Shown piece after piece: positions 27,888 to 52,935 of a stretch of 64,000 nt of DNA (position 1 is its first letter; every line of letters begins with the position of its first letter). The notes beneath the pieces are model-generated. The model made no database searches and was not told the DNA's origin. It worked only from the letters and a program-made list of their open reading frames with translations. The position numbers were made by a program, and so were the translations under genes. This DNA is from Octopus sinensis. Taxonomy: Eukaryota. The stretch spans positions 1-64,000 of the forward strand of contig NW_021832981.1 of assembly GCF_006345805.1 (NCBI RefSeq). The letters are read 5' to 3'.

Positions 27888-28226
27888 ATAATATCCTAAA
27901 ATATTTCTGAATTGATTTTGAAGAAGGTATTCTTTGTATTTCACATTCGTAATGACCCTCATCGCTACAAGTTATCTTTGACAAAGTTAGAGACACTTTC
28001 ACATTGCCCGAATGAAGACTGTGTACCTCTGTCTTGACGCGTTTCATATAATGTGGATCTAACCAAGCAGGGCCTGTGCTGTTGTTGACATGAACCAAGG
28101 GTACCTTTCCTTTTTTAAATGCAACACCGTAAACGTGTGATTTGTAATAATCGCTACACGTCATCGTAACGTTTGCTTTTCCTGATGCGAGAGTGCCTCG
28201 AATTTTGAAGTCAAGTGCTCCATTGT
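27888..28226 (-). CDS. Internal coding exon encoding one Ig-like (V/I-set) extracellular domain of an unidentified IgSF protein
   Basis: Minus strand has pyrimidine-rich acceptor ...tttttatatgtttcag|AC AAT GGA and donor TTA T|gtaagt. Length 339 bp (113 codons), phase 1-1 symmetric, as is typical for Ig-domain exons. Translation DNGALDFKIRG...VTMTC...GVAFKK...VSLTLSKITCSDEGHYECEIQ...KYFRIL has a B-strand Cys, a DxGxYxC F-strand motif 70 residues later, and sequons NVT, NNS, NST. Confidence 0.87.
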
Positions 28227-29324
28227 CTGAAACATATAAAAATGAAAAAAAAAAATCTGGTAGTTTTCGTATGACCATTTCCTGTTTCCAAAGAATTATA
28301 CGTAAATTGCAGTTGAAAAATTAAAAATAAATACATGCATTGACATGAAAAATCAGGCTCTTAAAATAGAAGAGAAAGGTTCTACAGATTTTTATGAGAG
28401 ACATATAGTTAATTCGCGTTGCGTTAGGATGTGATTTCGATTACGGGACCGGGCTCTGCGTTGCGTGCTTGAGCAAGCCACTTTATGTTACGTTGCTCTA
28501 GCTACTAAATGAATACTAGAATCACTTAAGAATTCGGGTTATTGTGACACGTGTCCTGTTCCCTGAGAAGTCCGGTATTTTCAGTCGTTTAAACGCATTG
28601 AAAACTGCTATACTACCCGGCTTAACAGATCTAGGTTCGATACCTGCACTTTAACCTTTATAGATTTTTTTACATAGTTTGTGGATATTAAATTTCTTTT
28701 TAAATAATATTTCTTGTTTTTGTATAGTAATTCACTGAAGTTTATGGCTTACTTAGTTTATCGATTCTAAAAGGAGTTTTAAGGTAAAATTAGTCCTGGG
28801 CAAATAAAACTTATAATATAACAACAATATTTGATCACCTGAAAATGAAAATGACTATATCTAAAACAGGTATTATAGCATCTATATTTGAGAATTTCTT
28901 AATTGTTATCAGAGTGAGAAGTGAAATTAATCCGAGCGTTAATTGATCCTTAAATGGAATCCCCAAACTTCTTAATTCTGCTCTTTATCATCAAATTGTT
29001 CTTAATTGCCCGGTTAGCAATTTGTATAGTTGCCTCGTAAATAAAAGGTCTAGAGTAGGCACCATCCCAACATATGAGTAGTAAACGTTTACTGTTTATG
29101 TAACAATCATTACAGTAGTAGTTTACTGCGACACACATAAAGCTGATTATCGGATTTGTAATATGACAAATCACAGGGATCCTAGGGAAACCAATAATTC
29201 CATAGGCGTTTAACTGTGAAGCGAAATCACTGTTAATTCAGGCAAATTCCGCTGTCGATCGAGACGTCTAAAAAGAAGACGACATTGCAGGGCATAGAAA
29301 AATTGAGGGCATACCCAAAAGGCG

Positions 29325-29878
29325 AGTAGTTTGGGGGAGGGGTTAGCCGATTATAGTGACCCCCAATATTCAATTGGTACTTATTTTATCGATCCCGAAA
29401 GGATGAAAGGCAAAGTCGACCTCGGCGGATTTTGAACTCAGAACGTAACGGCAGACGAAATACCGATTTCTTTACTACCCACAAGGGGCTAAACACAGAG
29501 ATGAGAAACAAGGACAGACAAACGGATTAAGTCGATTATATCGACCCCAGTGCGTAACTGGTTCTTGTTTAATCGACGCCGAAAGGATGAAAGGCAAAGT
29601 CGACCTCGGCGGAATTTGAACTCAGAACGTAACGACAGACGAAATACCTATTTCTTTTTTACCCACAAGGGGCTAAACACAGAGGGGACAAACAAGGACA
29701 GACAAACGGATTAAGTCGATTCTATCGACCCCAGTGCGTAACTGGTTCTTGTTTAATCGACGCCGAAAGGATGAAAGGCAAAGTCGACCTCGGCGGAATT
29801 TGAACTAAGAACGTAGCGATAGACGAAATACTGCTAAGCATTTCGCCCGGCGTGCTAACGATTCTGCCAGCTCGCCAC
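29325..29878 (-). mobile_element. SINE family A trimer
   Basis: One head at about 29878, two ~181-bp body-tail1 units, then a body with tail2. Junctions at about 29456-29470 and 29641-29654. Confidence 0.9.
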
Positions 29879-30605
29879 TCTTCTACCATTTCTGCCTTCT
29901 GTCTACCATTTCTAATAGGTAAAACATCCTAATCCCTCACTGGGGACAGCCTGATTCATTATGGTGAAGCAGTCGTACCTCGCAATCTTCCAGCCGACAA
30001 TATCGCACCAAGTATAGTAATATGAAGTCCATACATTATTAAGAGATAGACTACCACCATCTTTTATAACGAGATTTCGAAAGAAGCGGACGGGAAAAAG
30101 ACGTATTCAGACGACGCAAGACTTTCACACCAGAATTATTTTGCCTTTGTGAATGATACGCTTCACTGTTGTCAAACTACGACAGCGTTCATGACAGAGC
30201 ATATTGTCATCAATATCAATGTAGAAGAGGTTGAAAACAAGAATTTCCAGCGAGAAGATGGATGATCATTTAAATGCTAGACAATATATCTTGGGAATTT
30301 ACATACGAGCCATTCATCATTTCCTGACACGACAAATGAAGTATCAATAAGAGAGAATTGTATTGCGGTCATCTTGAAGAGTTAAAAGAAAATATTCATA
30401 GCGCCATTGCTAAGAATGCAAAGAAAAAAAAAAGGTAGGGTGTTGCAGAATCTTAACTCTTTTGAGACACAAGGTGTTTTGGTATGTGTACACAAACGAC
30501 CAATCTTTTTTTTTTTTTTCTCTGTTGCGATACATGTTCTGAAAGACGATCTCTGATTAGCTATTACACATCAAAACCAACCATTCACAACATTTGTTCT
30601 ATCGG

Positions 30606-30977
30606 GACGGCAGAAACGTTAGCGCGCTACGTTCTGAGTTCAAATTCCGCCGAGGTCGACTTTGCCTTTCGCCTTTCAGGGTCGATAAATTAAGTACCAG
30701 TTACGCACTGGGGTCGATATTATCGTATTAATAGCCATGTCTGTCCTTGTTTGTCCCCTCTATGTTTAGTCCCTTGTGGGTAATGAAGAAATAGGTATTT
30801 CGTCTGCCGCTACGTTCTGAGTTCAAAATCCGCCGAGGTCGACTTTGCCTTTCATCCTTTCGGGGTCGATAAATAAAGTACCAGTTTCGCACTGGATTCG
30901 ATGTAATCGACTTAATCCGTTTGTCCGTCCTTGTTTGTCCCCTCTATGTTTAGCCCCTTGTGGGTAGTAAAGAAATA
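30606..30977 (+). mobile_element. SINE family A dimer
   Basis: Two body-tail1 units joined at gaaataggtatttc (30788-30801). Confidence 0.88.
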
Positions 30978-31136
30978 TACATAATCTGAGATGATATGGG
31001 GAACTAGCTTAACAAAATAGTAGTTTACATTGGTACTAAGACAAGTTTGTTCAGTAAATGTTGAAAGATAAGGGAAAATATGCAGAAAAATAATTAACAT
31101 AAGGAAACGATTCATCATAACTATATTATCCCGAAC

Positions 31137-31521
31137 GTGGAGGCGCAATGGCCCAATGGTTAGGGCAGCGGACTCGCGGTCATAGGATCGCGGTTTCGAT
31201 TCCCAGACCGGGCGTTGTGAGTGTTTATTGAACGAAAACACCTAAAAGCTCCACGAGGCTCCGGCAGGTGATGGTGGTGATCCCTGCTGTACTCTTTCAC
31301 CACAACTTTCTCTCACTCTTACTTCCTGTTTCTGTTGTACCTGTATTTCAAGGGGCCGGCCTTGTCACTCTCTGTGTCACGCTGAATATCCCCGAGAACT
31401 ACGTTAAGGGTACACGTATCTGTGGAGTGCTCAGCCACTTACACGTTAATTTCACGAGCAGGCTGTTCCGTTGATTCGGATCAACCGGAACCCTCATCGT
31501 CGCAACCGACGGAGTGCTTCC
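31137..31521 (+). mobile_element. Full-length SINE family C with TSD
   Basis: TSD attatcccgaac at 31125-31136 and 31522-31533. Confidence 0.92.
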
Positions 31522-32747
31522 ATTATCCCGAACGAAGAGATGGAAGTTACAATATCACTTGGACTTGGATTTGAACTCAGAACCTAACAAAGAGATATGA
31601 GCCCTTGCAAGTTTTTTGAAAACAGTTTTGAATATTTATTCCTACATAAGGTGTCGAGTTGGCAGATTCGTTACTGCACCGGGCGAAAATGTATGTCCTG
31701 ATTTGGTCGTTCTGAGTTCAAATTCCGCCGACGCCGATTTTAGTTTTTATCCTTTAGATGGTGGTGGTGGGGGTCGATAAATTAAATACGGGTGAAACAC
31801 TGGAGTCGATGTAATCTACGTACCAAAGCTTGAAACCAGTATTCATTCCAGCAATAACTATTTCTTATTTAGATACAAAGGCAGCAAATGTTAGGAAAGT
31901 TAACTAAAAATTACTATCGATTTAGGACTTGACTGGGTTCTTTATTTGATCGACCCCCACAAAGGATGAAAGGCAAAGTTACCCTCGGTGAGATTTGAAA
32001 TGGGAACATAAAGACTCGGAAGAAAATAGCATAAAATATTTTATCCCACACTTCGAAACTTTTACCCTCTCGGGTCACCCAGGCCGATTGATCGGCCCAA
32101 GTGATACAAGCTGAAAGAACTTTGTTTAACAGTAAAACAGCAGAATTCTGAAAAATTACTGACGGGCCTATGTCACTATGTCAGTAAATAGTAAGTAAAC
32201 ATGGCTCAGAACGGAATATATTTTACCTCGCGGCAAAATAATTTATTCCGGTTTGCGAATTATCCTATTGCACACTTCATCATATTTCACTGTCACTTAC
32301 AAGTGAGTATGAATTAGTTATATATACCCGACTCTCGCTAATTGTTCAGTGCGTTTATGTCGTTGCAAGCAAAAATCGATGCTTTCTCGGCACCCTCACT
32401 CTTTATCTAGCGGAGCCTCCAGGATGTGACAGGATTTGTGTGTGTATGTATGTATGCGTGAGAGAGAGAGAGAGAGAGAGAGAAAGAAAGAGAGTGTGTG
32501 TGTATAAGAGAAAGTGTCTGTTAGAGAGCGTGTGTGTGAGAGAGAGCGTGTTTATGTGTATGTGAGAGAGTGTGTATGTGTGAGAGAGAGTGTGTGTGTG
32601 AGAGAGGCTGCGTGTGTAAGAGAGATAGAGAGTGTGTGTGAGAGAGAGGGTGTGTGTAAGGGAGAGAGAGTGTGTGTGAGAGAGAGAGAGAGTGTATGTG
32701 TGCGAGACAGAGAGAGAAAGTCTGTATGTGTGAGAGAGAGCGTGTGT

Positions 32748-32780
<33 letters not shown>

Positions 32781-33867
32781 GAAAAGAGGTGACTTCATCA
32801 GCTCACGGCTGGTGATTATTTACGGTTCAGTAGACTGGGGCAACGTGAGATGAATTGTCTTGAAAGGAAACGGCGTGTGGATCGATCCAGGAATTGAACC
32901 CATGATCTCATCATCAGTGGAACACCCTTGACGCGTTTTTACTGCTTCCTTTTATATTTTGCTCGTTTCACTTACAATAAGGGAACCATGCCGGGGGCGG
33001 TGCCTTGAAGGGTTTAGTCGAACAAATCGACTCCAGTTATTAGGCGGTGATAGGGGACAGACAGACAGACACAGACACACACATACACGATGGGTTTGCA
33101 TACAGTTTCTACCTACAATTTTAACGTGTACCGCTCAATTTCTCTTTGAGAGTTTGCATTTTTCTTTTTTTTCTTAGTTGTGAACAACTAATTATCAGTT
33201 ATATATGTGCTTATGTGTATACACACAATTATATACCTATATATGCCTGCGTAGGGGTGTCTATATGTCTCTGTGTATGAATACACCAGCACGTAAAATA
33301 TTGTCCTACCGTTTACACGTACATTAAAGTCCTATGTCATACAATGCTTTTTCATTGAATGTTCAAGATATTTTTGTGTAACACAAGTACAAAGAAAATA
33401 AATTTCCTCATCCGCCGTGTATCTCGATCTCTTTAAGCTAACGACCTGAAATCAAACTCTGCTGCTGACGAAGATGAAAAACACTCGAAAATCATGGATC
33501 AACTTCGTTGTTGAAATTTTTTGTTGTGTGAGTTTTGTCCTCTTTATGATGTCTATATTTCCACGCGATTGTTTGAAACCTGGACTAATCAGAGAAAAGA
33601 ACATGCTGCCAGGAATATTTTACGGCCTAACATTTCCTTTGCTCAGACTTTTCCAGGCTTTTCACTCATCGTTCCAACCTTCTCCGTGCATAGATATTAC
33701 AAAAGTCCTTCTTCATATACATAGATTTGGTGATACAAACAGGAAATGAGGACTCAATACATGAGTATGTATATATGTATGCAGGCATGTATGTATGTAT
33801 ATGAATATATGTATTAATATACATATATATCTGTATATCAATATTTGTATATATGAGGGTATGTCTT

Positions 33868-33944
<77 letters not shown>

Positions 33945-34192
33945 ACACACACACATAATATACATTTCTATACATACATGTATGCATACATACATACATA
34001 CAGGCTTGCATAAACATCGTATTATTAATCGGCATAGGTTACGTAGTGACTGAAAAGTTTGGGATTGTTGGTATGGCTGTTTTTGTATATGTGGAATAGC
34101 ATCATATCATATTCTTTTGATATATATATAAGTGTGTGTGTGTGTATGTATACAATGGATAAATTGTCGCCACTTTATGTTTTTAATATATG

Positions 34193-34230
<38 letters not shown>

Positions 34231-34252
34231 TATGTATGTATATATATACATA

Positions 34253-34300
<48 letters not shown>

Positions 34301-34377
34301 TATATACATATGAATTATAAATCTCTGAGTCAGACGTGTAACAGTAGCAGCTCGAAATCGTAAACTGTATTTACCAC

Positions 34378-34683
34378 TTAAATGTGGCGGACCGACTGAG
34401 GACGATGCTACTGTTGTTTATAGCCCCAGGAAGACATCTCCTCCAGCCGGCTAACGACACACAATCGGTGTCCGATTAGTATTTGCGAGGGGAAATCTTC
34501 GTTCCAATCTCTAGCCTTACGTGATACACACGTACCCGGGTTTCTGAGAAGTAACCCGTCATACATACGCTGACGCACATATTAATCGGACACAGATAAT
34601 ATGTCGTTAGCTAGCTGGATGAGATGTCTTCCTAGGGCTATAAATAAGAGTAGCATCGTTCCCTATGGGTCCATCACATTTAG
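34378..34683. mobile_element. Older palindromic MITE-like element
   Basis: Imperfect inverted arms of about 100 bp, e.g. gacgatgctactgttgtttatagccccaggaagacatctc versus gagatgtcttcctagggctataaataagagtagcatcgtt. Confidence 0.8.
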
Positions 34684-35462
34684 GTAGGAAATATACTTCA
34701 CGATATATATACAAATGTGTGTGTGTGTGTGTATAATTATATTTATAAGTAACCATACATATATTCTATATCATAGATATGCGTATATATGCATATATAT
34801 TATACATACATATTCACACACATACATATACACACACACACACACACACATACATACACACATATATGTATACATGTATCGGTTGTATGATAAAAGAAAA
34901 ATCAAGGATTTGACATTTTCAGTCAGGTACAGAAGAAGCATAATAAAGAAAAACGAAAATAGTAAGGAATCTGCCAAAAAAGAAAATGGTATTAGAATGG
35001 CAAGACTGTCCACCACAATAAATAAAATTGTCATGAACTGTTTATTATATCTGCCAGCGACAATAGCAACACACAACATTGAACAGCTATCAACGAGGTA
35101 GACTCTATGTCACTTGGCGTCCCACTAGACACGGCAGACATTTTTTTTACCTCTTTTCATATCATAATGCACCTATTTTCTATATGATATTAGATCATAG
35201 GTCTGCGCAAGTAGGTCAGAGTTGGGGATATAAAGCAGTAGCAGCAGTGTCAGTGTTAGTAGTGACAGCAACAACAGCAGCAGTGGAGGCGCAATGGCCC
35301 AGGGGTTAGGGCAGCGCACTCGCGGTCGTAAGAACGCGGTTTCGATTCCCAGACCTCGGCGGAATTTGAACTCAGAACGTAGCGGCAGGCGAAATACCGC
35401 TAAGCATTTCGCCCAGCGTGCTAACGCGTCTGCTAGCTCGCCGCCTCCAAAATTGATTTCAA

Positions 35463-35529
<67 letters not shown>

Positions 35530-35869
35530 TAATAATAATAATAATAGTAATAATAGTAATAATAATAATCCTGTCTACTAAAGGCACAAGACCTGAAATT
35601 TTCGGAAAGTGCACTAGTCGATTACATCGACCCCAGTTTTTCACGGTTACTTAATTTACCGACCTCGGGGTCGGTAAATTAAGTAACCGTGAAAAACTGG
35701 GGTCGATGGATGAAAGGCTAAGTCGAGTTCGGCGGAATTTGAACTCAGAACATGAAGACGGACGAAGTGCTGTGAAGCATTTTTGTCCGGCGTCATTACG
35801 GATTCTGCCAGCTCACAGTCTCAACCAGAACGACAATAATGGTAACCGTTACAAGTAGTGACATGCTTA

Positions 35870-36213
35870 GACACTACTACCATCACCACCGTCGCCGCCG
35901 CCACCACCACTAGATGCTTCATTGGTATTATAGCGCCACCACCAACACCACAACAACAGTAACAACCACCACCACTACCACCACCACAAGCACCAAACGA
36001 CAATAGCAATACCAGCAGCAGTAGCAGCAGCACCTTCATCAACACCACCGCCATGACGCCGCCGCAACCGCCACCACCGCCACCACCACCACCACCGCCA
36101 CCACCACCACCACAACCAGCACCACCAGCACCAGCACCACCACCACAACCACCACAACCAGCACCACCAGCACCACCACCGCCACCACCACCACCACAAC
36201 CAGCACCACCACC

Positions 36214-36244
<31 letters not shown>

Positions 36245-36294
36245 CAACACCACAACCAGCACCAACCACCACCACCGCCACCACCACCACCACA

Positions 36295-36325
<31 letters not shown>

Positions 36326-36690
36326 CAACCACCACAACCAGCACCACCACCACCACCACCACCACCGCCACCACCACCACCACCACCACCGCCACCACCA
36401 CCACCACAACCAGCACCACCACCACCACCGCCACCACCACCACCACCACAACCAGCACCACCGCCACCACCACCACCACCACAACCACCACCACCACCAC
36501 TGCCGCCAACACCACCACTACCACCAACTCTACCACCACCGCAGCCGCCGACCCCACCAGCACCAGCACCACCACCACCACCAGCACCAGTACCACCAGC
36601 ACCACCACCAGCAGCACCACCATCACTATCTACACAGCAACAACACCAACGACACCAACAACACCATCAACAACAACAGCAGCTGTAGTT
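35870..36690. repeat. (CCA)n-based trinucleotide array with recurring ccaccacaaccagca sub-units
   Basis: Direct reading; no stop codons in several frames purely from base composition. Confidence 0.9.
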
Positions 36691-37037
36691 GAAAAGTACC
36701 AAACGAAAACGTATAACGGAATGTTTGTGTTGTTTGCTTTGAAAACAGCAATTACATTGTTAGAGAGACGACGATCAATTCCTAAGACAAGACATGTTCT
36801 GGCAGCCAACCTGGCGTCGCCAAACGCCGTAAGTCTGCCATTTCCAAGAGATGACCATCACCATCAATACCACCGCCGCCGCCGCCGCTACCGCCGCCTC
36901 CATCACTACTAATACTACTACTACTACTACCACCCCTTCTACTAGCACTAATACCAATACTACGATCACAAAAGGAACAGAGCGACCACACACGTATGCT
37001 CTCTCTCTCTCTCACTGACGAACACGCACATACATAG

Positions 37038-37072
<35 letters not shown>

Positions 37073-37166
37073 GCTGCTGCTGCAACTACTGATACTACTA
37101 CTTATCTGTTTGCTATTTAATTTCAAAGGCCATTTATTTTTGCCTTGGCGCAAATGTATGAGAATA

Positions 37167-37262
<96 letters not shown>

Positions 37263-37279
37263 GTTTGTCTATCTGTCTA

Positions 37280-37315
<36 letters not shown>

Positions 37316-37416
37316 TCCGAGTGGATAGCGCTACAGAAGATTTGGCAGGCTGAAACTGAAAGAAGCCCGTCAAACATACATACATACATACATACAGACA
37401 TACATACATACATACA

Positions 37417-37447
<31 letters not shown>

Positions 37448-38297
37448 GCATTTCGTCCAGGAAGTTAATATTACTCTACCTCCGGTATTCGAGTACTATT
37501 TTTCCCAACCTTGTTTCACATATATGTGATTACTCTGATATGCATACACACATATATACGTGTGTGTGTATGTGTGTGTGTGTGTGTATGTATGTATGTG
37601 TGTATGTGTGTAAAGATATATTGCTTAAGTATTGCGAGTCTAATTACCTGATGTATAACTCAGCCTGATAGACAAATATAGAGTGGTAATAAGAAAAAAA
37701 AAAGATGTCAAAGTAAAAACGATTATGTTATGTAGTTCAGTAGCTTACAGGTGTTTCCGCTATAAGATGCAGTGGACTAATAGTTGAGCGCCTGAATAAC
37801 ACCTTATCACTTATCGGGGGTAGCATATGGAGTACAGAGCAAAGTGGCAATAATAAATGTCAAAAGAACACGAATTACACAATTAATTAACCTAAAGATC
37901 CTCCAGCAAAGCGAACGAAACAATGCTAACTCGATTATCCTCAGATCCAGAATAAATTTGAGGATGCAGACTGAATATTGGAGTTAACAAGACATCCAGC
38001 TAAATATGTTGAAAGTTCGTGTATTGTAAGTGCGGTGTTGCATTCGTATATATTAACCTGTGTTAATGTTATAGACACACCTCACAAGGGCCAACTAGGC
38101 CATTTCTACTTACTGACTAGACTTGCTAGGAATAACAATGAAATCCCCCTCAAAGCATTTTCGAAAAGATGCTTTTGTAAAGGAAAGAATGACACATTCG
38201 GCAGTCTTCCTAGATATATCCACACGCACGCACATAAATATTTCTAAGTTTAGCTGAAAAAAGAAGGCCTTGTCTTTCTAATACTGACCTGCTTGAT

Positions 38298-38717
38298 TTA
38301 CTCTTTACTCTTTTACTCTTTTACTTGTTTCAGTCATTTGACTGCGGCCATGCTGGAGCACCGCCTTTAGTCGAGCAACTCGACCCCGGGACTTATTCTT
38401 TTGTAAGCCTAGTACTTATTATATCGGTCTCTTTTCGCCGAACCGCTAAGTGACGGGGACATAAACACACCAGCATCGGTTGTCAAGCAATGCTAGAGGG
38501 ACAAATACACACAAACATATACACACACATACATATACATATATATATATATCCGACAGGCTTCTTTCAGTTTCCGTTTACCAAATCCACTCACAAGGCA
38601 TTGGTCGGCCCGAGGCTATAGCAAAAGCCACTTGCCCAAGATGCCACGCAGTGGGACTGAACCCGAAGCCATGTGGTTGGTAAACAAGCTATTTACCACA
38701 CAGCCACTCCTGCACCT
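38298..38717 (-). mobile_element. Full-length CORE-type tRNA SINE (family B, OR2-like)
   Basis: Head ggagtggctgtgtggtaa...ggttcagtccc, CORE-like catcttgggcaagtggctt, internal microsatellite, (AGTAAAAG)n tail. Confidence 0.88.
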
Positions 38718-39732
38718 GCTTGAATTACGTAAACAATTCAAATAAATCTCAAAGACAAAGATGCTTATATACATACATGCATGTATACTTATACGCACGT
38801 ATATACTTATGCATACATATATACATACATGCAAACATTCGTACTTGCGACTACTCATAAGTTTTTTGAGTTGCCGTCGCACCATCAATCAACGTTCGTT
38901 GAGAAGAAATAAGATGCGTTACTTAGCAAAGCTAAACATTAAAAATACATGCTAAATAACAGTATTAATATCACAATTGATTCACTCTGGAGAAAAGTGA
39001 TAAAGACAATGAACTATAACAACGAAATTAAAGCAATTGATGCAGAGATAGTGCTGCTGCAACCATTGCACAGACATGCAGTAGACACGAAGAAATAGAA
39101 ATGAGAGAAGGCTTCGAAGAGCCTAAAATAAATTTCACTATTTACCTCAACAAGCTACTAAATGAAAGAACGATTTTGACACGAGCATATTGAAGAAAAA
39201 AAAAGCGGGGAGAGATAGAGAAAGAATATATAAAATTGATGCTATCTGTGATCGATCTAATCGTTGAAGAACACCTAGTACAAATTGAAGCTTCCAGTTT
39301 TTAGACACTGAATATCCTAATGCATTTCTGTTGCAATTATCGTTTGCCAATAGACAGGAGTAACTGAAATCTATCGATTGATAACACAACCAAAATGGAT
39401 TACTTCTCTCCAAAACAACATCGATTGACTAACTAGAAACATCGGACAATTGGGTGTACTATCATTAGATGCAAAGTGAATAATGAATTCCTGTAACACT
39501 AGCTACGGTGTTACGATAGACTATCGAAACTGTACTGGAACTGCCATTATTAGACACAGATAAACATGTTGTCCTTAAACATGAAATACGAGTGGTAAGT
39601 AAAATGTTTTGTTATCACAATAAATTACACGGACTTTGGTTATTATCAATCTAAATTTGCATTAAAACCCTCAAACTGTACACCGCAGTATAAACGGCAA
39701 TATCATCGACGTTTTATATCCTTCTCAGCATG

Positions 39733-40354
39733 TTGATGTTGCTGTTTGTTCCTCCTCGAGCCATGCCTGGCTCATAAGGGCCGGTTTCCCGGTTTCCTTG
39801 GCGTATAGGTTCCCCACCTGGACGGGACGCCGGTCCGTCGCACTTGAGCTGCAAGATGCAGGAGGAAAGGGTGAGAGAAAGTTGTGGCGAAAGAGTCAGC
39901 AGAAGTTTCGCCATTACCTTCTGCCGGAGCCGCGTGGAGCTTAGGTGCTTTGCGCATAAACACACGATGCTCTAACCACTAAGCCATGGGCCTCCACAGT
40001 ACGATTTGTATACTGCCCAATTCTTTAAATGAAACATTAATAGTTTGTTGTTTGTTCCTTCTCGAGGCATGCTCTGGCTCATAAGAGCCGGTTTCCCGGT
40101 TTCCTTGGCGTATAGGTTCCCCACCTGGACGGGATGCCGGTCCGTCGCAGGTGAGCTGCAAGATGCAGGAGGAAAGATTGAGAGAAAGTGGTGGCGAAAG
40201 AGCCGGCTGAAATTTCGCCATTACCTTCTGCCGGAGCCGCGTGGAGCTTAGGTGTTTCGCTCATAAACACACACATCGTCCGGTCTGAGATTCGAACCCG
40301 CGATCTCTCGACCGCGATTCCGCTGCTTTAACCACTAGGCCATGTGCCTCCCAC
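39733..40354 (-). mobile_element. SINE family E dimer bounded by one 15-bp TSD
   Basis: atccttctcagcatg at 39718-39732 and 40355-40369. The downstream monomer (head at 39997) lacks its B box. Confidence 0.85.
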
Positions 40355-40677
40355 ATCCTTCTCAGCATGATCTGGAGTCATTCCTGTTGAAACAGAATCT
40401 GCTATTTAACCAAGCTGTAATATCGATAAATGAGTTATGGAAGGTAGTACTGAATAGACGTCTTTCCTAAAAGAATGACATCAATTGTGAAGCTCTCTCT
40501 CTCAAGATGATGCTACGTCATCATCAGCGGCAGTACAAAATGGTCTGTAAGGTCCTACCTTCTCATAAGACACGTCGCTGTTATTATAACTATTATAACT
40601 ATCTGCAATGCTTGCCATAGAAAGAATAATCGGGGAAGCCATAGTAAAAACTTAGCAGAACAAGAATGTATCCTTAC

Positions 40678-40725
40678 CTTATAAGGAAAGAATACTGGAA
40701 GAACATTGCTTTAAAAATAGCAATC
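40678..40725 (-). other. Tentative 48-bp upstream exon (possible 5' exon of the Ig gene)
   Basis: Good acceptor gttttatttgcacag| and donor AAG|gtaagg in unique sequence. Contains ATG (MFFQYSFLI) but ends in phase 2, so it cannot join the phase-1 Ig exon directly. Confidence 0.2.
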
Positions 40726-40835
40726 CTGTGCAAATAAAACATTTATTGACATTCGTCAAAGCTGAGAAGAGACAGACGATGAAATATTGCTCCCAGATAT
40801 AGGACAGTTAGGCTCCACAAGTACGACCTTAGTTG

Positions 40836-40947
<112 letters not shown>

Positions 40948-41284
40948 CTCTTTCCCCCTCTCTCTCTCCATCTCTTTTTCTGTCTATCTTGGGCCGTATC
41001 TAGAAAAGAACCACCCAACTAATTAGCATGTTTAACAGACACACTTCGGTCTCAGACTCACAGTCTCTCTCCCCTTCTCTCACCCTCACCCTCCTTCTCT
41101 CTCCCTCTTCCTTTCTTTTTCTCTCCCTCTCTCTTTTTTCTCCCTCCCCTTAAATGTCGTGCACTGCTTTAGATGCGAAAATACCGCGTAACATTGCAGA
41201 GGGAGAGAGGGAGAAAGAGAGAGAGAAGGAGAGAGAGAGACGGAAACTGAAAGAAGCACGTTGTATAAGTATATATATATATAT

Positions 41285-41529
41285 ATACAAAATTAAGAGG
41301 AATGACCACTAAAGTGGACACCCTATATGCTAAACATAGACGTCAAATCGCCATTACCACGAAGAATGTGTTCTCAAGAAAATAGAATCAGCAAAAACCC
41401 ATTTTCACATTTTGGCGTTTGGCTGGGATTTTTTTCTTGAGAACACATTCTTCGTGGTAATGGCGATTTGACGTCTATGTTTAGCATATAGGGTGTCCAC
41501 TTTAGTGGTCAGTCATCTTAATTTTGTAT
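41285..41529. mobile_element. Young palindromic element, 98-bp arms
   Basis: 41285-41382 versus 41432-41529 differ at only 2 positions; the 49-bp spacer is itself partly self-complementary. Confidence 0.9.
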
Positions 41530-41617
41530 GTAACACAATTTTTAATCTTCGGATTTTTTAAATATGCTAAGCCACTGGTTTTAGTTGATTAATATCAATT
41601 TCTAACCTTATTATCTA

Positions 41618-41655
<38 letters not shown>

Positions 41656-42189
41656 TGGGTTTGCAAACTTCAATAAAAGCATGCATCATACCAATGCTAT
41701 CCTACCCCACACAATAGCAAAATATACATATTATTATGTTGTAATGCATTGTGTAACCACATGAGGGTTCTTCTGTACTGTGCGGGTGCATTCCATTCCA
41801 TTATATCGTTCCTTCACCCACAAGGGAGAAGTTCAGATGTAAGCCGAAACGATCGTCGTGCTAAATAAAGCTTACAGTACGCTTTGTCTTCACAATGGAT
41901 TATTTAATGTGTATGTGTGTGTGTGTGCATGTGTGTGTATGTATATGTGTCTTTGTGTCTCTGTGTGTGCTCCACCAACGCTTGACAACAAGTGTTGGTG
42001 TTTTTACGTTCCTGTAACCTAGCTGTTCGACAAATGCACTCGATGAAATAAGTACCAAACGATGGGTCGATTCATGGCGATACCTTGGCATGGCCATAGT
42101 CTAGGGACTGAAATAAGTAGTAAAAAGATAAAAAATATATATATATATATACATATACGAATATTTTCTTATTACATAACAAAAAGGAT

Positions 42190-42437
42190 AAAGGTCTTTC
42201 TCGTGTCATGGAGACTCTTAAGGGCTGGTTTCCCAGTTTCCACGGCGTATATATCCCCCACTTGGACGGGACACCGCACCGTCGCAGGATTACTCATGTT
42301 TGCCAGCTGAGTGAACTGGAGCAAAATGGAACGAAGTGTTTTGCTCAAAAACACAACGCGTCGCCCGATCCATGAATCGAAACTACAATCTTACAATCAC
42401 GACTCAATCCCCTAACTACGAAGCCATACACCTACAC
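42190..42437 (-). mobile_element. SINE with tRNA head, CORE-like body and V-like 3' half
   Basis: ttgagcaaaacacttcgttccattttgctccagttcactcagctgg followed by cctgcgacggtgcggtgtcccgtccaagtggggg...ggaaactgggaaacc, as in family E. Confidence 0.7.
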
Positions 42438-43130
42438 AGTCTATTACAAGATATATACATGATACAAAGATATTACGTAAGATTCTGGCATCAAGTGCAA
42501 ATTCTTCACTAATATAGATTACTACTAGACGCAAACGATGTCCGGAAGAACAAGAAGAAAGATCAGAACAGTCTAGACAGTCTTTGACTATTGCATTTTA
42601 TCACTAATGCAGGCAGTACATGTTGAACGACAGATGCAAAAATGAAGACACGAATTGAGTTTAAAAAGTGTAGATAGAATTATTTTCCAAGTCAGAATGT
42701 AAATTATTTTCTAAGACGGAATGTAGTTCGTCTAGAAACAGTAAATATAAGATGATATCAAATGCGATTACATAAATGATTAGTTTTTTTTTTTTTTCTG
42801 AAGAGAAAATCTGGTTTTAACACATTTTTCGTACAAAAAAGTAGATATGCAAATACATTTATACTGTACACTTCAAAATTCTTACATTTTAAGTTCACGA
42901 GAAGTGTAGCCATTCTTGAATTATTCATCTCTTTATCACATCAGGTTTCGAACATTAAGTATTTGTAATCCTAAAGCAAGGGAATGGCAACACAATGCTT
43001 GGTGAGAATAATCTTGAAATTGATGCGTGACTCATTATTGCGGTTATGTCATATGTGTATACATGGTCGTACTTTATGGCACCTCATCAGTTTCAGGCCG
43101 TAGAAGGGAGAGTGAATTTGGGGAGTTTTT

Positions 43131-43548
43131 TTTTACTTGTTTCAGTCATTTGACTGCGGCCATGCTGGAGCACCGCCTTTTAGTCGAGCAAATTGACCCC
43201 GGGACTTATTCTTTGTAAGCCTAGTACTTATTCTATCGGTCTCTTTTGCCGAACCGCTAAGTGACGGGGACGTAAACACACCACCATCGGTTGTCAAGCA
43301 ATTCTAAGGGGACAAACACACACACACAAACACACACACATAAACACATACACATGCACACACATATATATATATACATATATACGACAGGCTTCTTTCA
43401 GTTTCCGTCTACCAAATTCACTCACAAGGCATTGGTCGGTCCGGGGCTATAGCAGAAGACACTTGCCCAAGATGTCACGCGATGGGACTGAACCAGGAAC
43501 CATGTGGTTGGTTAGCAAGCTACTTACCACACAGCCACTCCTGCGCCT
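43131..43548 (-). mobile_element. Full-length SINE family B
   Basis: Same architecture as 38298-38717. Confidence 0.88.
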
Positions 43549-43940
43549 ATTTACTAGCAAATTCTTAGCCTTTCGTGCCAGAGCTACGGTGAAGACGTCG
43601 GCAGCGGGTCGTTGGATAAATCACAAAGCGGAGGAGTCCTAGGCCAACGGCTTGAGGTTTACTGCGACCAAGCGGAAGATCTGTGTCATCAGACAAAGGT
43701 TGGGCGTCAACTAATGAGGGAGCTGCTACCTTGAGGTAGCCTGATGGTAGGCCACGCTCGTTCCACTCTTGTACAGCTCTTGATACTTGGAGTGGAGATT
43801 CAGAGAGACAGTCTGGTTGGTAAGGGCGGGTGACGCTAAATGCCTTACTCACCGTCCAAAGGCGTTTTGTTCTGAAAAGAGGTCTTAACACCGACGTACG
43901 ACGTACAGCTGACGACTACGGACATACTCTTCACTCTTAT

Positions 43941-44320
43941 CTTTTTACTTGTTTCAGTCATTTGACAGCGGCCATGCTGGAGCACCGCTTTTAGTTGAAC
44001 AAATCGGCCCCATAATTTACACTTTGCAAACGTAGTACTTATTCTAGAGGTCTCTTTCCCGAACCGCTAAGACCAACATCTATTGTCAAGCGATGGTGGA
44101 GGGATAAACACAGACACATAAACATGCACACACACGAACATACACACACACACACACACACACGACGGGCTTCTTTCAGTTTCTGTCTACCAAATCCACT
44201 CGCGAGGCTTTTGTCGGCCCAAGGCTATAGCAGAAGACACTTGCCCAAGGTGCCATGCAGTGAGACTGAACCCAGAACCATGTGGCTGGTAAGCAGACTA
44301 CTTACCACGCACCCACTCCT
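43941..44320 (-). mobile_element. Full-length, more diverged SINE family B
   Basis: Same architecture as 38298-38717. Confidence 0.85.
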
Positions 44321-49223: not shown

Positions 49224-49369
49224 TTGTGTATGTGTGTATTTTTTCTTTTACTTGTTTCAGGCATTTAACTGCAGCCATGCTGGAGCACAGCCTTTAGTCG
49301 CACAAATCGAATTCAGGACTTATTCTTTGTAAGCCTAGTACTTATTCTATCGGTCAACTCCAACAGTAA

Positions 49370-50933: not shown

Positions 50934-51316
50934 GTGGAGGCGCAATGGCCCAGTGGTTAGGGCAGCGGATTCGCGGTCGTAGGATCGCGGTTTCGATTCC
51001 CAGACCGGGCGTTGTGAGTGTTTATTGAGCGAAAATACCTAAAAGCTCCACGAGGCTCCGGCAGGGGATGGTTGTGATCCCTGCTGTACTCTTTCACCAC
51101 AACTTTCTCTCACTCTTACTTCCTGTTTCTGTTGTACCTGTATTTCAAGGGGTCGGCTTGTCACTCTCTGTGTCACGCTGAATATCCCCGAGAACTACGT
51201 TAAGGGTGCACGTGTGTGGAGTGCTCAGCCACTTACACGTTAATTTCACGAGCAGGCTGTTCCGTTGATTCGGATCAACCGGAACCCTCATCGTCGTAAC
51301 CGACGGAAGTGCTTCC
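50934..51316 (+). mobile_element. Full-length SINE family C with 14-bp TSD
   Basis: TSD attatacttcatta at 50920-50933 and 51317-51330. Confidence 0.92.
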
Positions 51317-52076
51317 ATTATACTTCATTAACTGCCTTCGGTTTATAAACCAGCAACTGTGTATTGATTGGCTGCACGTATAATCCTTTATTCTTTTATT
51401 ATCATTTCATTTGTTTCAGTCATTCGACTGAGGCCATACTGGAGCACCATCCTAGAATGGTTTACTCAAAGAAATCGACACCAATCGGAGTGGTGCAGTG
51501 GCTGTGTGGTAAGTAGCTTGTTTACCAGCCACATGGTTCCGGGTTCAGACCCACTACGTGGCACCTTCGGCAAGTGTCTTCTACAATAGCCTCGGGCCGA
51601 CCAAAGCCTTGTGAGTGGATTTGATAGACACACAGTCTGTTTACTAAATTCATTCACATGGTGGCAATCGCCCCGGGATTATAGCTGTGCAGCGAAACTG
51701 AACTCAAAACCACGTCTTTGAGAAGAGTACTACTTAACGATGCAATTATACCTTCACCCATATATACCTATAGCATATACCTATAAGGCGGAGAATTGGC
51801 AGAAACGTTAGCATGCCGGGCGAAATGCTTAGCCGGTACGTTCTGATTTCAAATTCCGCCGAGGTCGACTTTGCCTTTCATCCTTTCGGGGTCGATAAAT
51901 TAAGCACCAGTTACGCATTGGGGTCGATGTAATCGACTTAATCCGTTCGTCTGTCCTTGTTTGTCCCTTCTATGTTTAGCCCCTTGTGGGTAGTAAAGAA
52001 ATATATATACCTATAGCATACACACAAACATATGCTCAATCATAAATACACCCACGCATATATTTTCAATTCGATG

Positions 52077-52114
<38 letters not shown>

Positions 52115-52118
<4 letters not shown>

Positions 52119-52935
52119 CTTGTTTCAGTCATTTGACTGCGGCCATGCTGGAGCACCGCCTTTAATCGAGCAACTCGACCCCGGGACTTATTCTTTGTAA
52201 GCCCAGTACTTATTCTATCGGTCTCTTTTTGCCGAACCGTTAAGTAACGGGACAAACCACACCAGCATCGGTTGTCAAGCAATGCTAGGAGGACAAACAC
52301 AGACACACAAACATACACTCACATGCATATATTATATATATACGAACAGGCTTCTTTCAGTTTCCGTCTACAAAATCCACTCAAGTCTTGGTCGGCCCAA
52401 GGCTATAGTAGAAGACACTTGCCCAAGGTGCCACGTAGTGGGACTGAACCCGGAACCATGAGGTTGGTAAGCAAGCTACTTACCACACAGCACTCCTACG
52501 CTCATATATATATATATCTATATATATATAATATAGTTACTTTTTTCAGTTCAGTCATTTGACTGCGCCATGCTGGAGCCAACCGCCTTAATCGAGCAAC
52601 TCGACCCCGGGACTTATTCTTTGTAAGCCCAGTACTTATTCTATCGCGGTCTCTTTTTGCCGACCGTTAAGTAACGGGACATAACCACAACCACCATGCA
52701 TCGGTTGTCAAGCAATGCTAGGAGGACAAACACAGACACACAAACATACACTCACATGCATATATATATATATATACGACAGGCTTCTTTCAGTTTTCCG
52801 CTACCAAATCCACTCACAAGTCTTTGGTCGGCCCAAGCTATAGTAGAAGACCTTGCCCAAGGTGCCACGTAGTGGACTGAACCCGGAACTGAGGTGGTAA
52901 GCAAGCTACTTACCACAAACAGCCACTCCTACCTC
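52115..52935 (-). mobile_element. Two tandem SINE family B copies (52115-52500 and 52537-52935)
   Basis: Both share private variants; the second differs mainly by small indels. Confidence 0.85.

What the first reader, a model, noticed from the sequence alone, without database searches (positions are those of the whole stretch)
27888..28226. Lone divergent Ig-domain exon with Trp-to-Phe core and an extra cysteine
Seen: the only clear coding exon in 64 kb. The C-strand has F (GVAFKK) where Ig domains usually have W, and a third Cys in ITCSDEGHYEC has no partner within the exon; three N-glycosylation sequons are present. No second Ig exon was recognised in the window. Inference: a member of a lineage-specific IgSF family (adhesion, neural recognition or immune receptor) whose free Cys may mediate dimerization.
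Basis: partly seen in the sequence, partly recalled or inferred. Interest (0 to 1): 0.7.

Follow-up and report, generated by a model that had tools for sequence, protein, structure and literature searches.

The report
Octopus Ig V-domain exon, giant-intron gene
The "lone" exon is real: it is the V-type immunoglobulin exon of an already-annotated but unstudied octopus gene for a small two-Ig-domain membrane protein. It looks isolated only because the gene's introns are far longer than the 64-kb window.

Summary
Window 27888-28226 (minus strand) is a 339-nt phase 1-1 exon with a strong acceptor (Y-tract + AG) and a GTAAGT donor. It encodes a 113-aa V-set Ig domain (Pfam 26.2 bits, cut-off 26).

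Its peptide is 100% identical to residues 25-137 of the Octopus vulgaris predicted protein CAI9736927.1. That protein is named "uncharacterized LOC106882031"; the O. sinensis gene is LOC115222062.

The protein reads N-terminal exon, V-set, CD80-like C2-set, transmembrane helix with a CCxC motif, then an acidic tail. The O. vulgaris gene spans about 204 kb. Its annotated first coding exon lies in the window at 43853-43925(-). The second Ig, TM and tail exons lie beyond the window start, so that intron exceeds 27.9 kb.

The exon is under purifying selection (dN/dS 0.17; exon 94% vs introns 78-88% identity to another octopus). It is spliced into intron-less transcripts of more distant, probably squid-like, relatives.

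Phe-for-Trp in strand C and the extra Cys are invariant across the family and absent from 26 neighbouring V domains.

Searches found no paralogues and no relatives beyond these cephalopod sequences. This is an ordinary new member of the IgSF; function untested.

The parts
27888..28226 (-). Exon 2 of the gene: complete V-set Ig domain (113 codons plus split codons), phase 1-1
   Evidence: Sequence reading; Pfam V-set; 100% identity to P0098 residues 25-137; dN/dS 0.17
28227..28252 (-). 3' splice site of intron 1: polypyrimidine tract and AG (28228-28227)
   Evidence: Read directly. The read-through residues FLYVS are identical in the other-octopus contig P0001/L001
27882..27887 (-). 5' splice site of intron 2: GTAAGT
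   Evidence: Read directly. The read-through residues CKY* are identical in P0001. The junction RIL|S(K/R)PGPL is used in intron-less transcripts L002-L007
43853..43925 (-). Coding part of the annotated exon 1 (MSVVVSCTSYVGVKTSFQNKTPLD + G), followed by the donor GTGAGT at 43852-43847. It is not a convincing signal peptide
   Evidence: tblastn of P0098 residues 1-24 gives 22/24 identical; sequence read. The 5' flank 43925/43942-44071 is a copy of a dispersed repeat
28227..43852 (-). Intron 1 (15,626 nt), rich in microsatellites and SINE-like repeats
   Evidence: Follows from the two exon positions; repeats
1..27887 (-). Proximal 27.9 kb of intron 2; contains no further exon of the gene
   Evidence: tblastn of P0098/P0099/P0005 finds no D2, TM or tail exon. 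The O. sinensis D2-to-3' locus L009, including 10 kb upstream of D2, shares only repeats with the window

Best explanation
The feature is exon 2 of a single-copy gene found so far only in coleoid-cephalopod-type sequences. The gene is LOC106882031 in O. bimaculoides and LOC115222062 in O. sinensis; the O. vulgaris proteins are CAI9736925-7.

The gene encodes a roughly 320-370-aa single-pass type I membrane glycoprotein. From the N-terminus it has:
- a leader;
- a membrane-distal V-set domain, which is this exon;
- a CD80-like C2-set domain;
- a TM helix ending in a CCxC/CCCY motif;
- a cytoplasmic acidic Ser/Asp/Glu cluster.

Each Ig domain is one phase-1 exon. The exons are separated by very long introns, which is why a 64-kb window shows only the V exon.

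Shown:
- the exon boundaries, and its identity with the annotated protein;
- purifying selection on the exon;
- the domain architecture;
- use of the homologous splice junction in cDNAs of distant relatives;
- conservation of F37 and C87.

Inferred:
- The protein acts as a cell-surface adhesion or recognition receptor. The fast-evolving V domain (51-55% identity octopus vs distant relatives) would carry the binding face. The slower-evolving D2/TM/juxtamembrane module (64-76%) would carry structural, cis-interaction or trafficking constraints.
- The extra Cys in the D1 E-F turn faces the top of D2. It most likely pairs with D2's invariant odd Cys in the C'-E region, locking the D1-D2 hinge.
- The CCxC motif is a palmitoylation site, and the acidic cluster is a CK2-type sorting signal.
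For: Exon anatomy and phase.

Domain assignments:
- V-set 26.2-27.4 bits vs cut-off 26.
- D2 as C2-set_2: 22.8 bits vs cut-off 21 for P0098, and 28 bits for the Argonauta protein.

Identity and gene structure:
- 100% identity of the exon peptide to P0098 residues 25-137, with the names of the orthologues.
- Gene range of 203.9 kb in O. vulgaris.
- D2, TM and tail exons mapped in O. sinensis L009, with no colinearity to the window.

Selection and expression:
- Exon 93.8% vs introns 88% and 78% identity; 12.5 synonymous vs 8.5 non-synonymous changes; dN/dS 0.17.
- Intron-less 2.1-2.3-kb contigs with a contiguous leader-V-C2-TM-tail ORF occur in at least 24 sequencing runs. The genomic D2 exon of a close relative stands alone, with no V exon within 10 kb.
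- The three O. vulgaris isoforms come from a transcript-aware pipeline (Iso-Seq/RNA-seq, PASA; PMC10700109).

Conserved residues:
- F61, C48, C111, C119 and C206 (P0098 numbering) are invariant.
- Among 26 neighbouring V domains, W occupies the F position in 19 and F in 0. Cys occupies the C87 position in 0.
- Per-domain identities.

No paralogues or further relatives.
Against: - No octopod gene model has a convincing signal peptide. The O. vulgaris exon 1 is only weakly hydrophobic. The O. bimaculoides and Argonauta models start at an internal Met of the V exon. The O. sinensis models skip the V exon altogether. No better leader exon was found in the window.
- I saw no octopus transcript directly. 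Splicing of this exon in octopus rests on the O. vulgaris annotation and on conservation.
- Function is entirely inferred. Matches to characterised IgSF proteins are weak (best profile E 7.6e-7 to VEGFR2 D7; ALCAM, BCAM and PVR at 4e-4 to 1e-2).
- The AF2 models were poor (mean pLDDT 37 and 55; D2 30-60), so the D1-D2 disulfide is untested. The Foldseek hits are generic two-Ig proteins at TM about 0.3.
- Octopods have a seventh ectodomain Cys (RLCGE), so parity does not close there.
Confidence: 0.85

Rival explanations
1. One reading: the third Cys of the V domain is unpaired within the chain and forms an interchain disulfide, giving a covalent homodimer or a link to a partner chain.
For: C87 (C111 of P0098) is invariant and sits in a surface turn. 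A symmetric dimer with D1-D1' plus D2-D2' bonds would also satisfy the even Cys count of the non-octopod orthologues. Octopods have an odd total of 7, so at least one Cys there is free or interchain.
Against: The E-F turn lies at the membrane-proximal end of a V domain, next to D2. This follows from standard Ig topology and is an inference. D2 carries an equally invariant odd Cys just before strand E, at its D1-facing end. No structural or biochemical test was possible.
Confidence: 0.25
2. The exon is a decaying or non-functional relic, or an optional cassette, that is normally skipped, as suggested by the O. sinensis RefSeq models that start in the D2 exon.
For: O. sinensis isoforms X1 and X2 lack the V exon. 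No octopus transcript-derived protein with this exon turned up in the searches.
Against: The frame is intact, and the splice sites are canonical and conserved in a second octopus. dN/dS is 0.17, and the exon is better conserved than its introns. The exon is included in the models of O. vulgaris, O. bimaculoides and Argonauta, and in every transcript contig of the distant relatives. The O. sinensis models begin at an internal Met, with the upstream part of the D2 exon (KPGPLK) and its acceptor intact. That is the signature of a truncated prediction. A Met-start inside an Ig domain with no leader makes no functional type I protein.
Confidence: 0.05
3. It belongs to a diversified, multi-copy immune-type receptor family, or to a giant multi-Ig matrix protein (hemicentin/perlecan-like), as the names of the top heterologous hits might suggest.
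For: The phmmer hits with the lowest E-values after the orthologues are fish multi-V proteins named hemicentin-like or perlecan-like.
Against: Those E-values come from summing many weak repeats (7-25 stretches at 30-45% identity over short segments). All orthologues have exactly two Ig domains plus a TM. No paralogous exon is in the window, and no paralogous cluster is in the databases.
Confidence: 0.03

Closest known systems
Annotated orthologues: O. vulgaris CAI9736925-7, O. bimaculoides XP_052830655.1 (LOC106882031), O. sinensis LOC115222062, Argonauta hians GAB1605342.1
   Same: This is the same gene. The exon peptide is 100% identical to the O. vulgaris protein, 92% to O. bimaculoides and 77% to Argonauta. 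The V / C2 / TM / acidic-tail order is the same.
   Different: All are only 'uncharacterized protein' predictions with incomplete or doubtful N-termini. The window's exon-1 peptide differs at 2 of 24 residues from O. vulgaris, so the window comes from a very close relative or another individual. O. sinensis is a guess. The O. sinensis RefSeq models omit this exon.
Two-domain V + C2-set_2 receptors (CD80/CD86-type; also D1-D2 of PVR/nectin, ALCAM/CD166, BCAM/Lutheran)
   Same: A membrane-distal V-set domain followed by a Pfam C2-set_2 domain, then a single TM and a short tail. These give the best profile-to-PDB matches for D2 and D1-D2: ALCAM 3.9e-4, BCAM 2.9e-3, PVR 7e-3.
   Different: The similarity is weak and generic, with no orthology. 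There are two Ig domains, not three (nectin/Necl) or five (ALCAM/BCAM). F replaces the core Trp. Each domain has an extra Cys. The CCxC + acidic-cluster tail is not a feature I know from those families.
CTX/JAM/CAR family (V + C2, type I)
   Same: Two-domain V + C2 architecture with additional cysteines in the C2 domain. There are weak matches to the CAR V domain (E about 0.05).
   Different: From my own knowledge, CTX-family Ig domains are encoded by split half-domain exons. Here V is one exon and D2 is one exon. No significant sequence relationship was found.
Siglecs / MAG (V-set to C2-set interdomain disulfide)
   Same: They are a precedent, from established knowledge, for an odd Cys in a V-set D1 bonding to an odd Cys in a C2-set D2. 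Siglec-10 is among the generic Foldseek hits.
   Different: Siglecs have an unusual intrasheet disulfide in D1 and use a Cys elsewhere in D1. Here the canonical B-F pair is kept and the extra Cys is in the E-F turn. This is an analogy only, and the bond itself is unproven here.

Membership tests
Ig V-set domain (Pfam PF07686) | Profile score at or above the curated gathering score | tested here: met
   26.2 bits for the exon alone and 27.4 for P0098, against a cut-off of 26. This is borderline. The squid-like P0005 scores 23.5, below the cut-off
Ig V-set domain (Pfam PF07686) | B- and F-strand cysteines about 65-75 residues apart, with a D-x-G-x-Y-x-C motif before the F-strand Cys | tested here: met
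   C24 and C95 of the exon are 71 residues apart; DEGHYEC is present; all are invariant in the family
Ig V-set domain (Pfam PF07686) | Core Trp in strand C | tested here: not met
   Phe (GVAFKK) is invariant in all orthologues. W occupies this position in 19 of 26 neighbouring V domains and F in none. It is a conservative aromatic replacement and does not remove the fold assignment. AF2 places strand C at exon residues 32-39 with pLDDT about 78-83
Ig V-set domain (Pfam PF07686) | One domain per exon, flanked by phase-1 introns | tested here: met
   339-nt exon, phase 1-1
CD80-like C2-set domain (Pfam PF08205) for domain 2 (outside the window) | Profile score at or above the gathering score | tested here: met
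   P0098 22.8 and Argonauta 28.0, against a cut-off of 21. P0005 scores 18.2, below it
Nectin / Necl (CADM) / PVR | Three Ig domains (V-C2-C2) in the ectodomain | tested here: not met
   There are only two Ig domains before the TM in every orthologue
Nectin / Necl (CADM) / PVR | Significant sequence relationship | tested here: inconclusive
   Profile vs PVR D1-D2 gives E 0.007-0.01; nectin-2 gives 0.27
CTX / JAM / CAR family | Ig domains encoded by split (half-domain) exons (definition from my own knowledge) | tested here: not met
   The V domain is one exon. D2 is one exon in L008 and L009
Siglec | Intrasheet disulfide in D1 replacing the canonical B-F pair, plus a D1-D2 interdomain disulfide (definition from my own knowledge) | tested here: not met
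   The canonical B-F Cys pair is retained. The interdomain bond could not be tested
Rearranging or antigen-receptor-like V(J), or mollusc FREP-type molecules | J-like FGxG motif in strand G, or an attached fibrinogen or chitin-binding domain, with multigene diversification | tested here: not met
   Strand G reads SIQKYFRIL with no FGxG. There is no other domain than C2-set_2 and the TM. The gene is single-copy

The most novel reading that the evidence does not exclude
A receptor specific to coleoid cephalopods (octopus, squid, cuttlefish) that arose or diverged beyond recognition in that ancestor. Its V and C2 domains would be covalently locked by an E-F-turn to C'-E-loop disulfide, a linkage position not known to me from other IgSF families. 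Its rapidly evolving V face would serve cell-cell recognition, for example in the expanded cephalopod nervous system.
Probability: 0.25. Interest if true: 0.4.

Novelty: new member of a known kind. Interest (0 to 1): 0.22.

Why it matters
The main value is a clean-up. An apparently orphan Ig exon is placed in a known gene model.

The work also shows that the octopod models of this gene are incomplete at the 5' end. The O. sinensis RefSeq models miss this exon altogether, and no octopod model has a proper leader.

Biologically, this is one more small, conserved, lineage-restricted IgSF membrane protein in animals whose cell-recognition repertoire is of interest. It has two unusual but conserved structural details, a Trp-to-Phe core change and paired odd cysteines, which could be tested cheaply.

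It opens no long-standing question, and a specialist would not be surprised by it.

Tried and rejected
1. Paralogous or second Ig exons in the window. tblastn with the exon and with full-length orthologues found none.

2. A hit at 27286-27396(-), just downstream of the exon (E=1.2). Its ORF has no Pfam domain, so I treat it as chance.

3. A real signal-peptide exon in the 36 kb upstream. I used donor- and phase-constrained scans and local alignment to the squid-like leader. Only microsatellite-derived artefacts turned up.

4. AF2 of the full-length protein (pLDDT 37) and of the ectodomain (pLDDT 55; D1 about 78, D2 30-60). Both were too poor to test Cys proximity, and the tool gives no coordinates.

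5. Foldseek against PDB on that model. It returned generic Fab, Siglec, CD226 and IgLON two-Ig hits at TM about 0.3, which is not informative.

6. Profile search for relatives outside the family. It returned the same five clusters.

7. Fetching the O. vulgaris locus. The isoforms P0098 and P0099 are not on record.

8. Literature search by gene id, accession and run accession. Nothing on this gene was found. A SPLASH paper mentioning octopus and V-set was unrelated.

9. The top phmmer hit P0002, a 2764-aa metagenome protein. I dismissed it as a repeat-summed artefact.

10. A tRNA scan for the SINE-like repeats found none.

Full report
**1. The observation**

The feature lies on the minus strand. 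Reading the reverse complement gives three parts:
- a long pyrimidine tract ending in tttcAG (AG at 28228-28227);
- an open frame from 28226 to 27888 (339 nt);
- the donor GTAAGT at 27887-27882.

The exon starts with two bases of a codon and ends with one. Both flanking introns are therefore phase 1, the usual arrangement for one-domain Ig exons.

The peptide is DNGALDFKIRGTLASGKANVTMTCSDYYKSHVYGVAFKKGKVPLVHVNNSTGPAWLDPHYMKRVKTEVHSLHSGNVKVSLTLSKITCSDEGHYECEIQRIPSSKSIQKYFRIL.
- GVAFKK;
- ITCSDEGHYEC;
- three Cys;
- the sequons NVT, NNS and NST. The last two overlap.

Pfam gives V-set at E=9.7e-6 and 26.2 bits, just over the gathering score of 26. PDB sequences give only weak V-like matches such as pIgR, CEACAM and light chains.

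This is the longest high-complexity open frame in the window. None of 20 other such frames has a Pfam domain.

The rest of the window is AT-rich (about 36% GC) and packed with microsatellites and dispersed repeats.

**2. What it belongs to**

A phmmer scan of 1.84 billion representatives gave two informative hits.
- P0001 is 94% identical. It is an ORF called on a 1.4-kb genomic contig of another octopus-like species, reading through the same intron flanks.
- P0005 is 51% identical over the whole domain. It is a 319-aa protein with a classical leader, this V domain, a second Ig domain, a TM helix and an acidic tail.

Searching with P0005 returned P0098, which is O. vulgaris CAI9736927.1. Residues 25-137 of P0098 are 100% identical to the window's exon.

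Cluster members are:
- O. vulgaris isoforms of 322, 356 and 366 aa;
- O. bimaculoides XP_052830655.1 (LOC106882031);
- O. sinensis LOC115222062 isoforms X1 and X2;
- Argonauta hians GAB1605342.1.

All are named 'uncharacterized'. I found no paper on the gene.

**3. Gene structure and why the exon looks alone**

tblastn of P0098 against the window finds two things:
- the V exon;
- the annotated first coding exon at 43925-43854(-), 22/24 identical.

That first exon ends G|GTGAGT in phase 1, which joins correctly to AC.. of exon 2 to give Asp. Intron 1 is therefore 15.6 kb.

No D2, TM or tail exon is present in the 27.9 kb downstream.

The O. vulgaris gene range is 203,883 bp for a 366-aa product. 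The median gene in that annotation is about 20 kb and the median intron about 2.5 kb (PMC10700109).

In O. sinensis the part from the D2 exon to the last exon spans 51.9 kb (L009). Neither that part nor its 10-kb upstream flank is colinear with the window; they share only repeats. Intron 2 is thus more than 37.9 kb if the window is from that species. By subtraction in O. vulgaris it is roughly 136 kb, which is an inference.

D2 is a single exon in O. sinensis (L009 9974-10315) and in a squid-like genomic contig (L008). In L008 no V exon lies within 10 kb upstream.

**4. Is the exon functional?**

I compared the window with the other-octopus contig L001.
- The exon is 93.8% identical with no indels.
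- The upstream intron flank is 88% identical.
- The downstream intron flank is 78% identical, or 71% counting gaps.

By Nei-Gojobori, dS = 0.19, dN = 0.033 and dN/dS = 0.17.

The residues produced by reading through both splice sites (FLYVS... and ...CKY*) are identical in the two species. The splice-site nucleotides are therefore conserved.

In the distant relatives, contigs of 2.1-2.3 kb from at least 24 sequencing runs carry a contiguous leader-V-C2-TM-tail ORF. Given the genomic separation seen in L008, these contigs are cDNAs. They use the homologous RIL|SRPGPL junction.

'Squid or cuttlefish-like' is my inference from 59-62% identity to the octopus protein.

The three O. vulgaris isoforms come from a pipeline that adds alternative forms from transcript assemblies.

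The O. sinensis models that lack the exon start at an internal Met of the D2 exon. The upstream KPGPLK and its acceptor are intact there. This points to truncated prediction rather than genuine skipping.

**5. Anatomy of the protein**

Pfam gives V-set for D1. For D2 it gives C2-set_2 (CD80-like), at 22.8 bits for P0098 and 28 for Argonauta against a cut-off of 21.

The TM segment reads ELGVEEIAGITAGCLLAALILLGFCCWC, followed by QRRKQYSEDDSDDEDEKQRMEPD.

| Region | Octopus vs distant relatives | vs Argonauta |
|---|---|---|
| D1 (V-set) | 51-55% | 77% |
| D2 (C2-set) | 75-76% | 92% |
| TM | 64% | 89% |
| Juxtamembrane/acidic | 70-74% | 83% |

The V domain is therefore the fastest-evolving folded part.

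**6. The two 'odd' features**

F at the strand-C Trp position, and the Cys eight residues before the F-strand Cys, are invariant in all orthologues.

I aligned the exon to 26 neighbouring V domains from the heterologous hits that span both canonical Cys.
- The F position holds W in 19, Y in 1 and F in 0.
- The extra-Cys position holds Cys in 0.

They are family signatures rather than decay.

The extra Cys occupies the E-F turn. By standard Ig topology this turn lies at the end of the V domain that abuts the next domain (inference).

D2 also has an invariant odd Cys (TSCQYH/TTCQYY) just ahead of strand E, at its D1-facing end. This placement rests on the alignment to ALCAM D2.

The non-octopod orthologues have 3 + 3 ectodomain Cys. 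Octopods add a seventh in RLCGE.

An intrachain D1-D2 disulfide is the most economical reading. A symmetric covalent dimer is not excluded.

Two AF2 runs on the shallow family alignment gave mean pLDDT of 37 and 55. D1 scored about 78 and D2 30-60. The question stays open.

Foldseek returned only generic two-Ig hits.

**7. Comparison with known families**

The architecture, a V domain plus a C2-set_2 domain, a TM and a short tail, resembles CD80/CD86-type two-domain receptors. It also resembles D1-D2 of PVR/nectin, ALCAM and BCAM.

Profile-to-PDB E-values are only 4e-4 to 1e-2.

The protein fails the defining features of four families I considered:
- nectin/Necl, which have three Ig domains;
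- the CTX/JAM family, which has split Ig exons;
- Siglecs, which have a non-canonical D1 disulfide;
- V(J)- or FREP-type immune molecules.

A profile of six orthologues recovered only the same five clusters among 5.8 billion proteins. The single-domain scan found no closer non-cephalopod relative.

At this sensitivity, and with these databases, the gene is single-copy and restricted to coleoid-type sequences.

**8. Verdict**

It is wrong in treating the exon as isolated and its Cys as partnerless.

This is an ordinary, already-annotated but uncharacterised gene with very long introns. Interest is low to modest.

Open items:
- the true leader exon in octopods;
- direct transcript evidence in octopus;
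- the disulfide pattern;
- expression site and ligand.

Noticed in passing
window 43925-44071 (-), with copies at 43130-43261, 38299-38450, 52079-52964 (433-nt tandem, 2.1 copies), 49246-49355 and 51399-51448: A dispersed repeat about 80-86% identical between copies. One copy abuts the ATG of the annotated exon 1, so the annotated 5' end of the gene starts inside or next to a repeat. That adds doubt about whether it is the true first exon.
   Followed up: partly
window 29375-29831, 30625-30977, 62558-62922 (184-nt units in tandem pairs); related ORF fragments near 11.6, 13.2, 21.2 and 24.0 kb: A SINE-like element (…GTTCAAATTCCGCCGAGGTCGACTTTGCCTTTCATCC…) scattered on both strands. Its read-through ORFs give 'RPRKDERQSRPRRNLNSER'-type peptides. 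ARAGORN finds no intact tRNA in the window.
   Followed up: partly
window 31137-31527, 50934-51322, 6904-7265 (-): An element of about 390 nt that is 91-96% identical to two copies inside the O. sinensis locus L009. It appears to be a young, high-copy repeat family shared with O. sinensis.
   Followed up: no
window 2815-4986, 18246-19278, 19494-19902, 36067-36626, 25538-25974, 58423-58663, 60248-60594: Very long microsatellites: (AT)n up to 2.2 kb, (ACC)n of 560 nt giving a GC skew of -0.44, plus (TCTA)n, (CTAT)n and (TTA)n. They generate most of the long 'ORFs' in the mechanical list.
   Followed up: no
window 8102-8431 (+), within the GC-richer block at about 6-8.5 kb: An ORF containing '…RRLRWFGHACRRP…GGQLKTWVTTIKE…'. 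From memory it resembles the C-terminal tail of non-LTR retrotransposon ORF2 proteins. It has no Pfam hit, so this is only a lead.
   Followed up: partly
L009 (O. sinensis) 34196-34264 and 35491-35559; also 10835-10900: The cytoplasmic-tail exon (KQRMEPDSEISMSKMPKPN) occurs twice about 1.3 kb apart with identical translation. A partial copy of the 3' end of the D2 exon lies about 500 nt downstream of the real one. These are local duplications or assembly artefacts.
   Followed up: no
Orthologue models P0099/P0102 (O. sinensis), P0103 (O. bimaculoides), P0105 (Argonauta), P0098 (O. vulgaris): No octopod gene model has a classical signal peptide. Two start at the internal Met of MTCSD in the V exon, two start at MENINN in the D2 exon, and one has a weakly hydrophobic 24-aa exon. 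The squid-like transcripts have a normal leader (MHPHLLPFWVYILVGLVYA…). The octopod 5' end is probably mis-annotated.
   Followed up: partly
P0002 (JGI/IMG metagenome protein, 2764 aa): It ranked second in the phmmer scan (E 3.5e-37) only because about 25 identical repeats each match a short stretch of the query. It is unrelated to the finding and is a reminder that summed repeat scores inflate significance.
   Followed up: no
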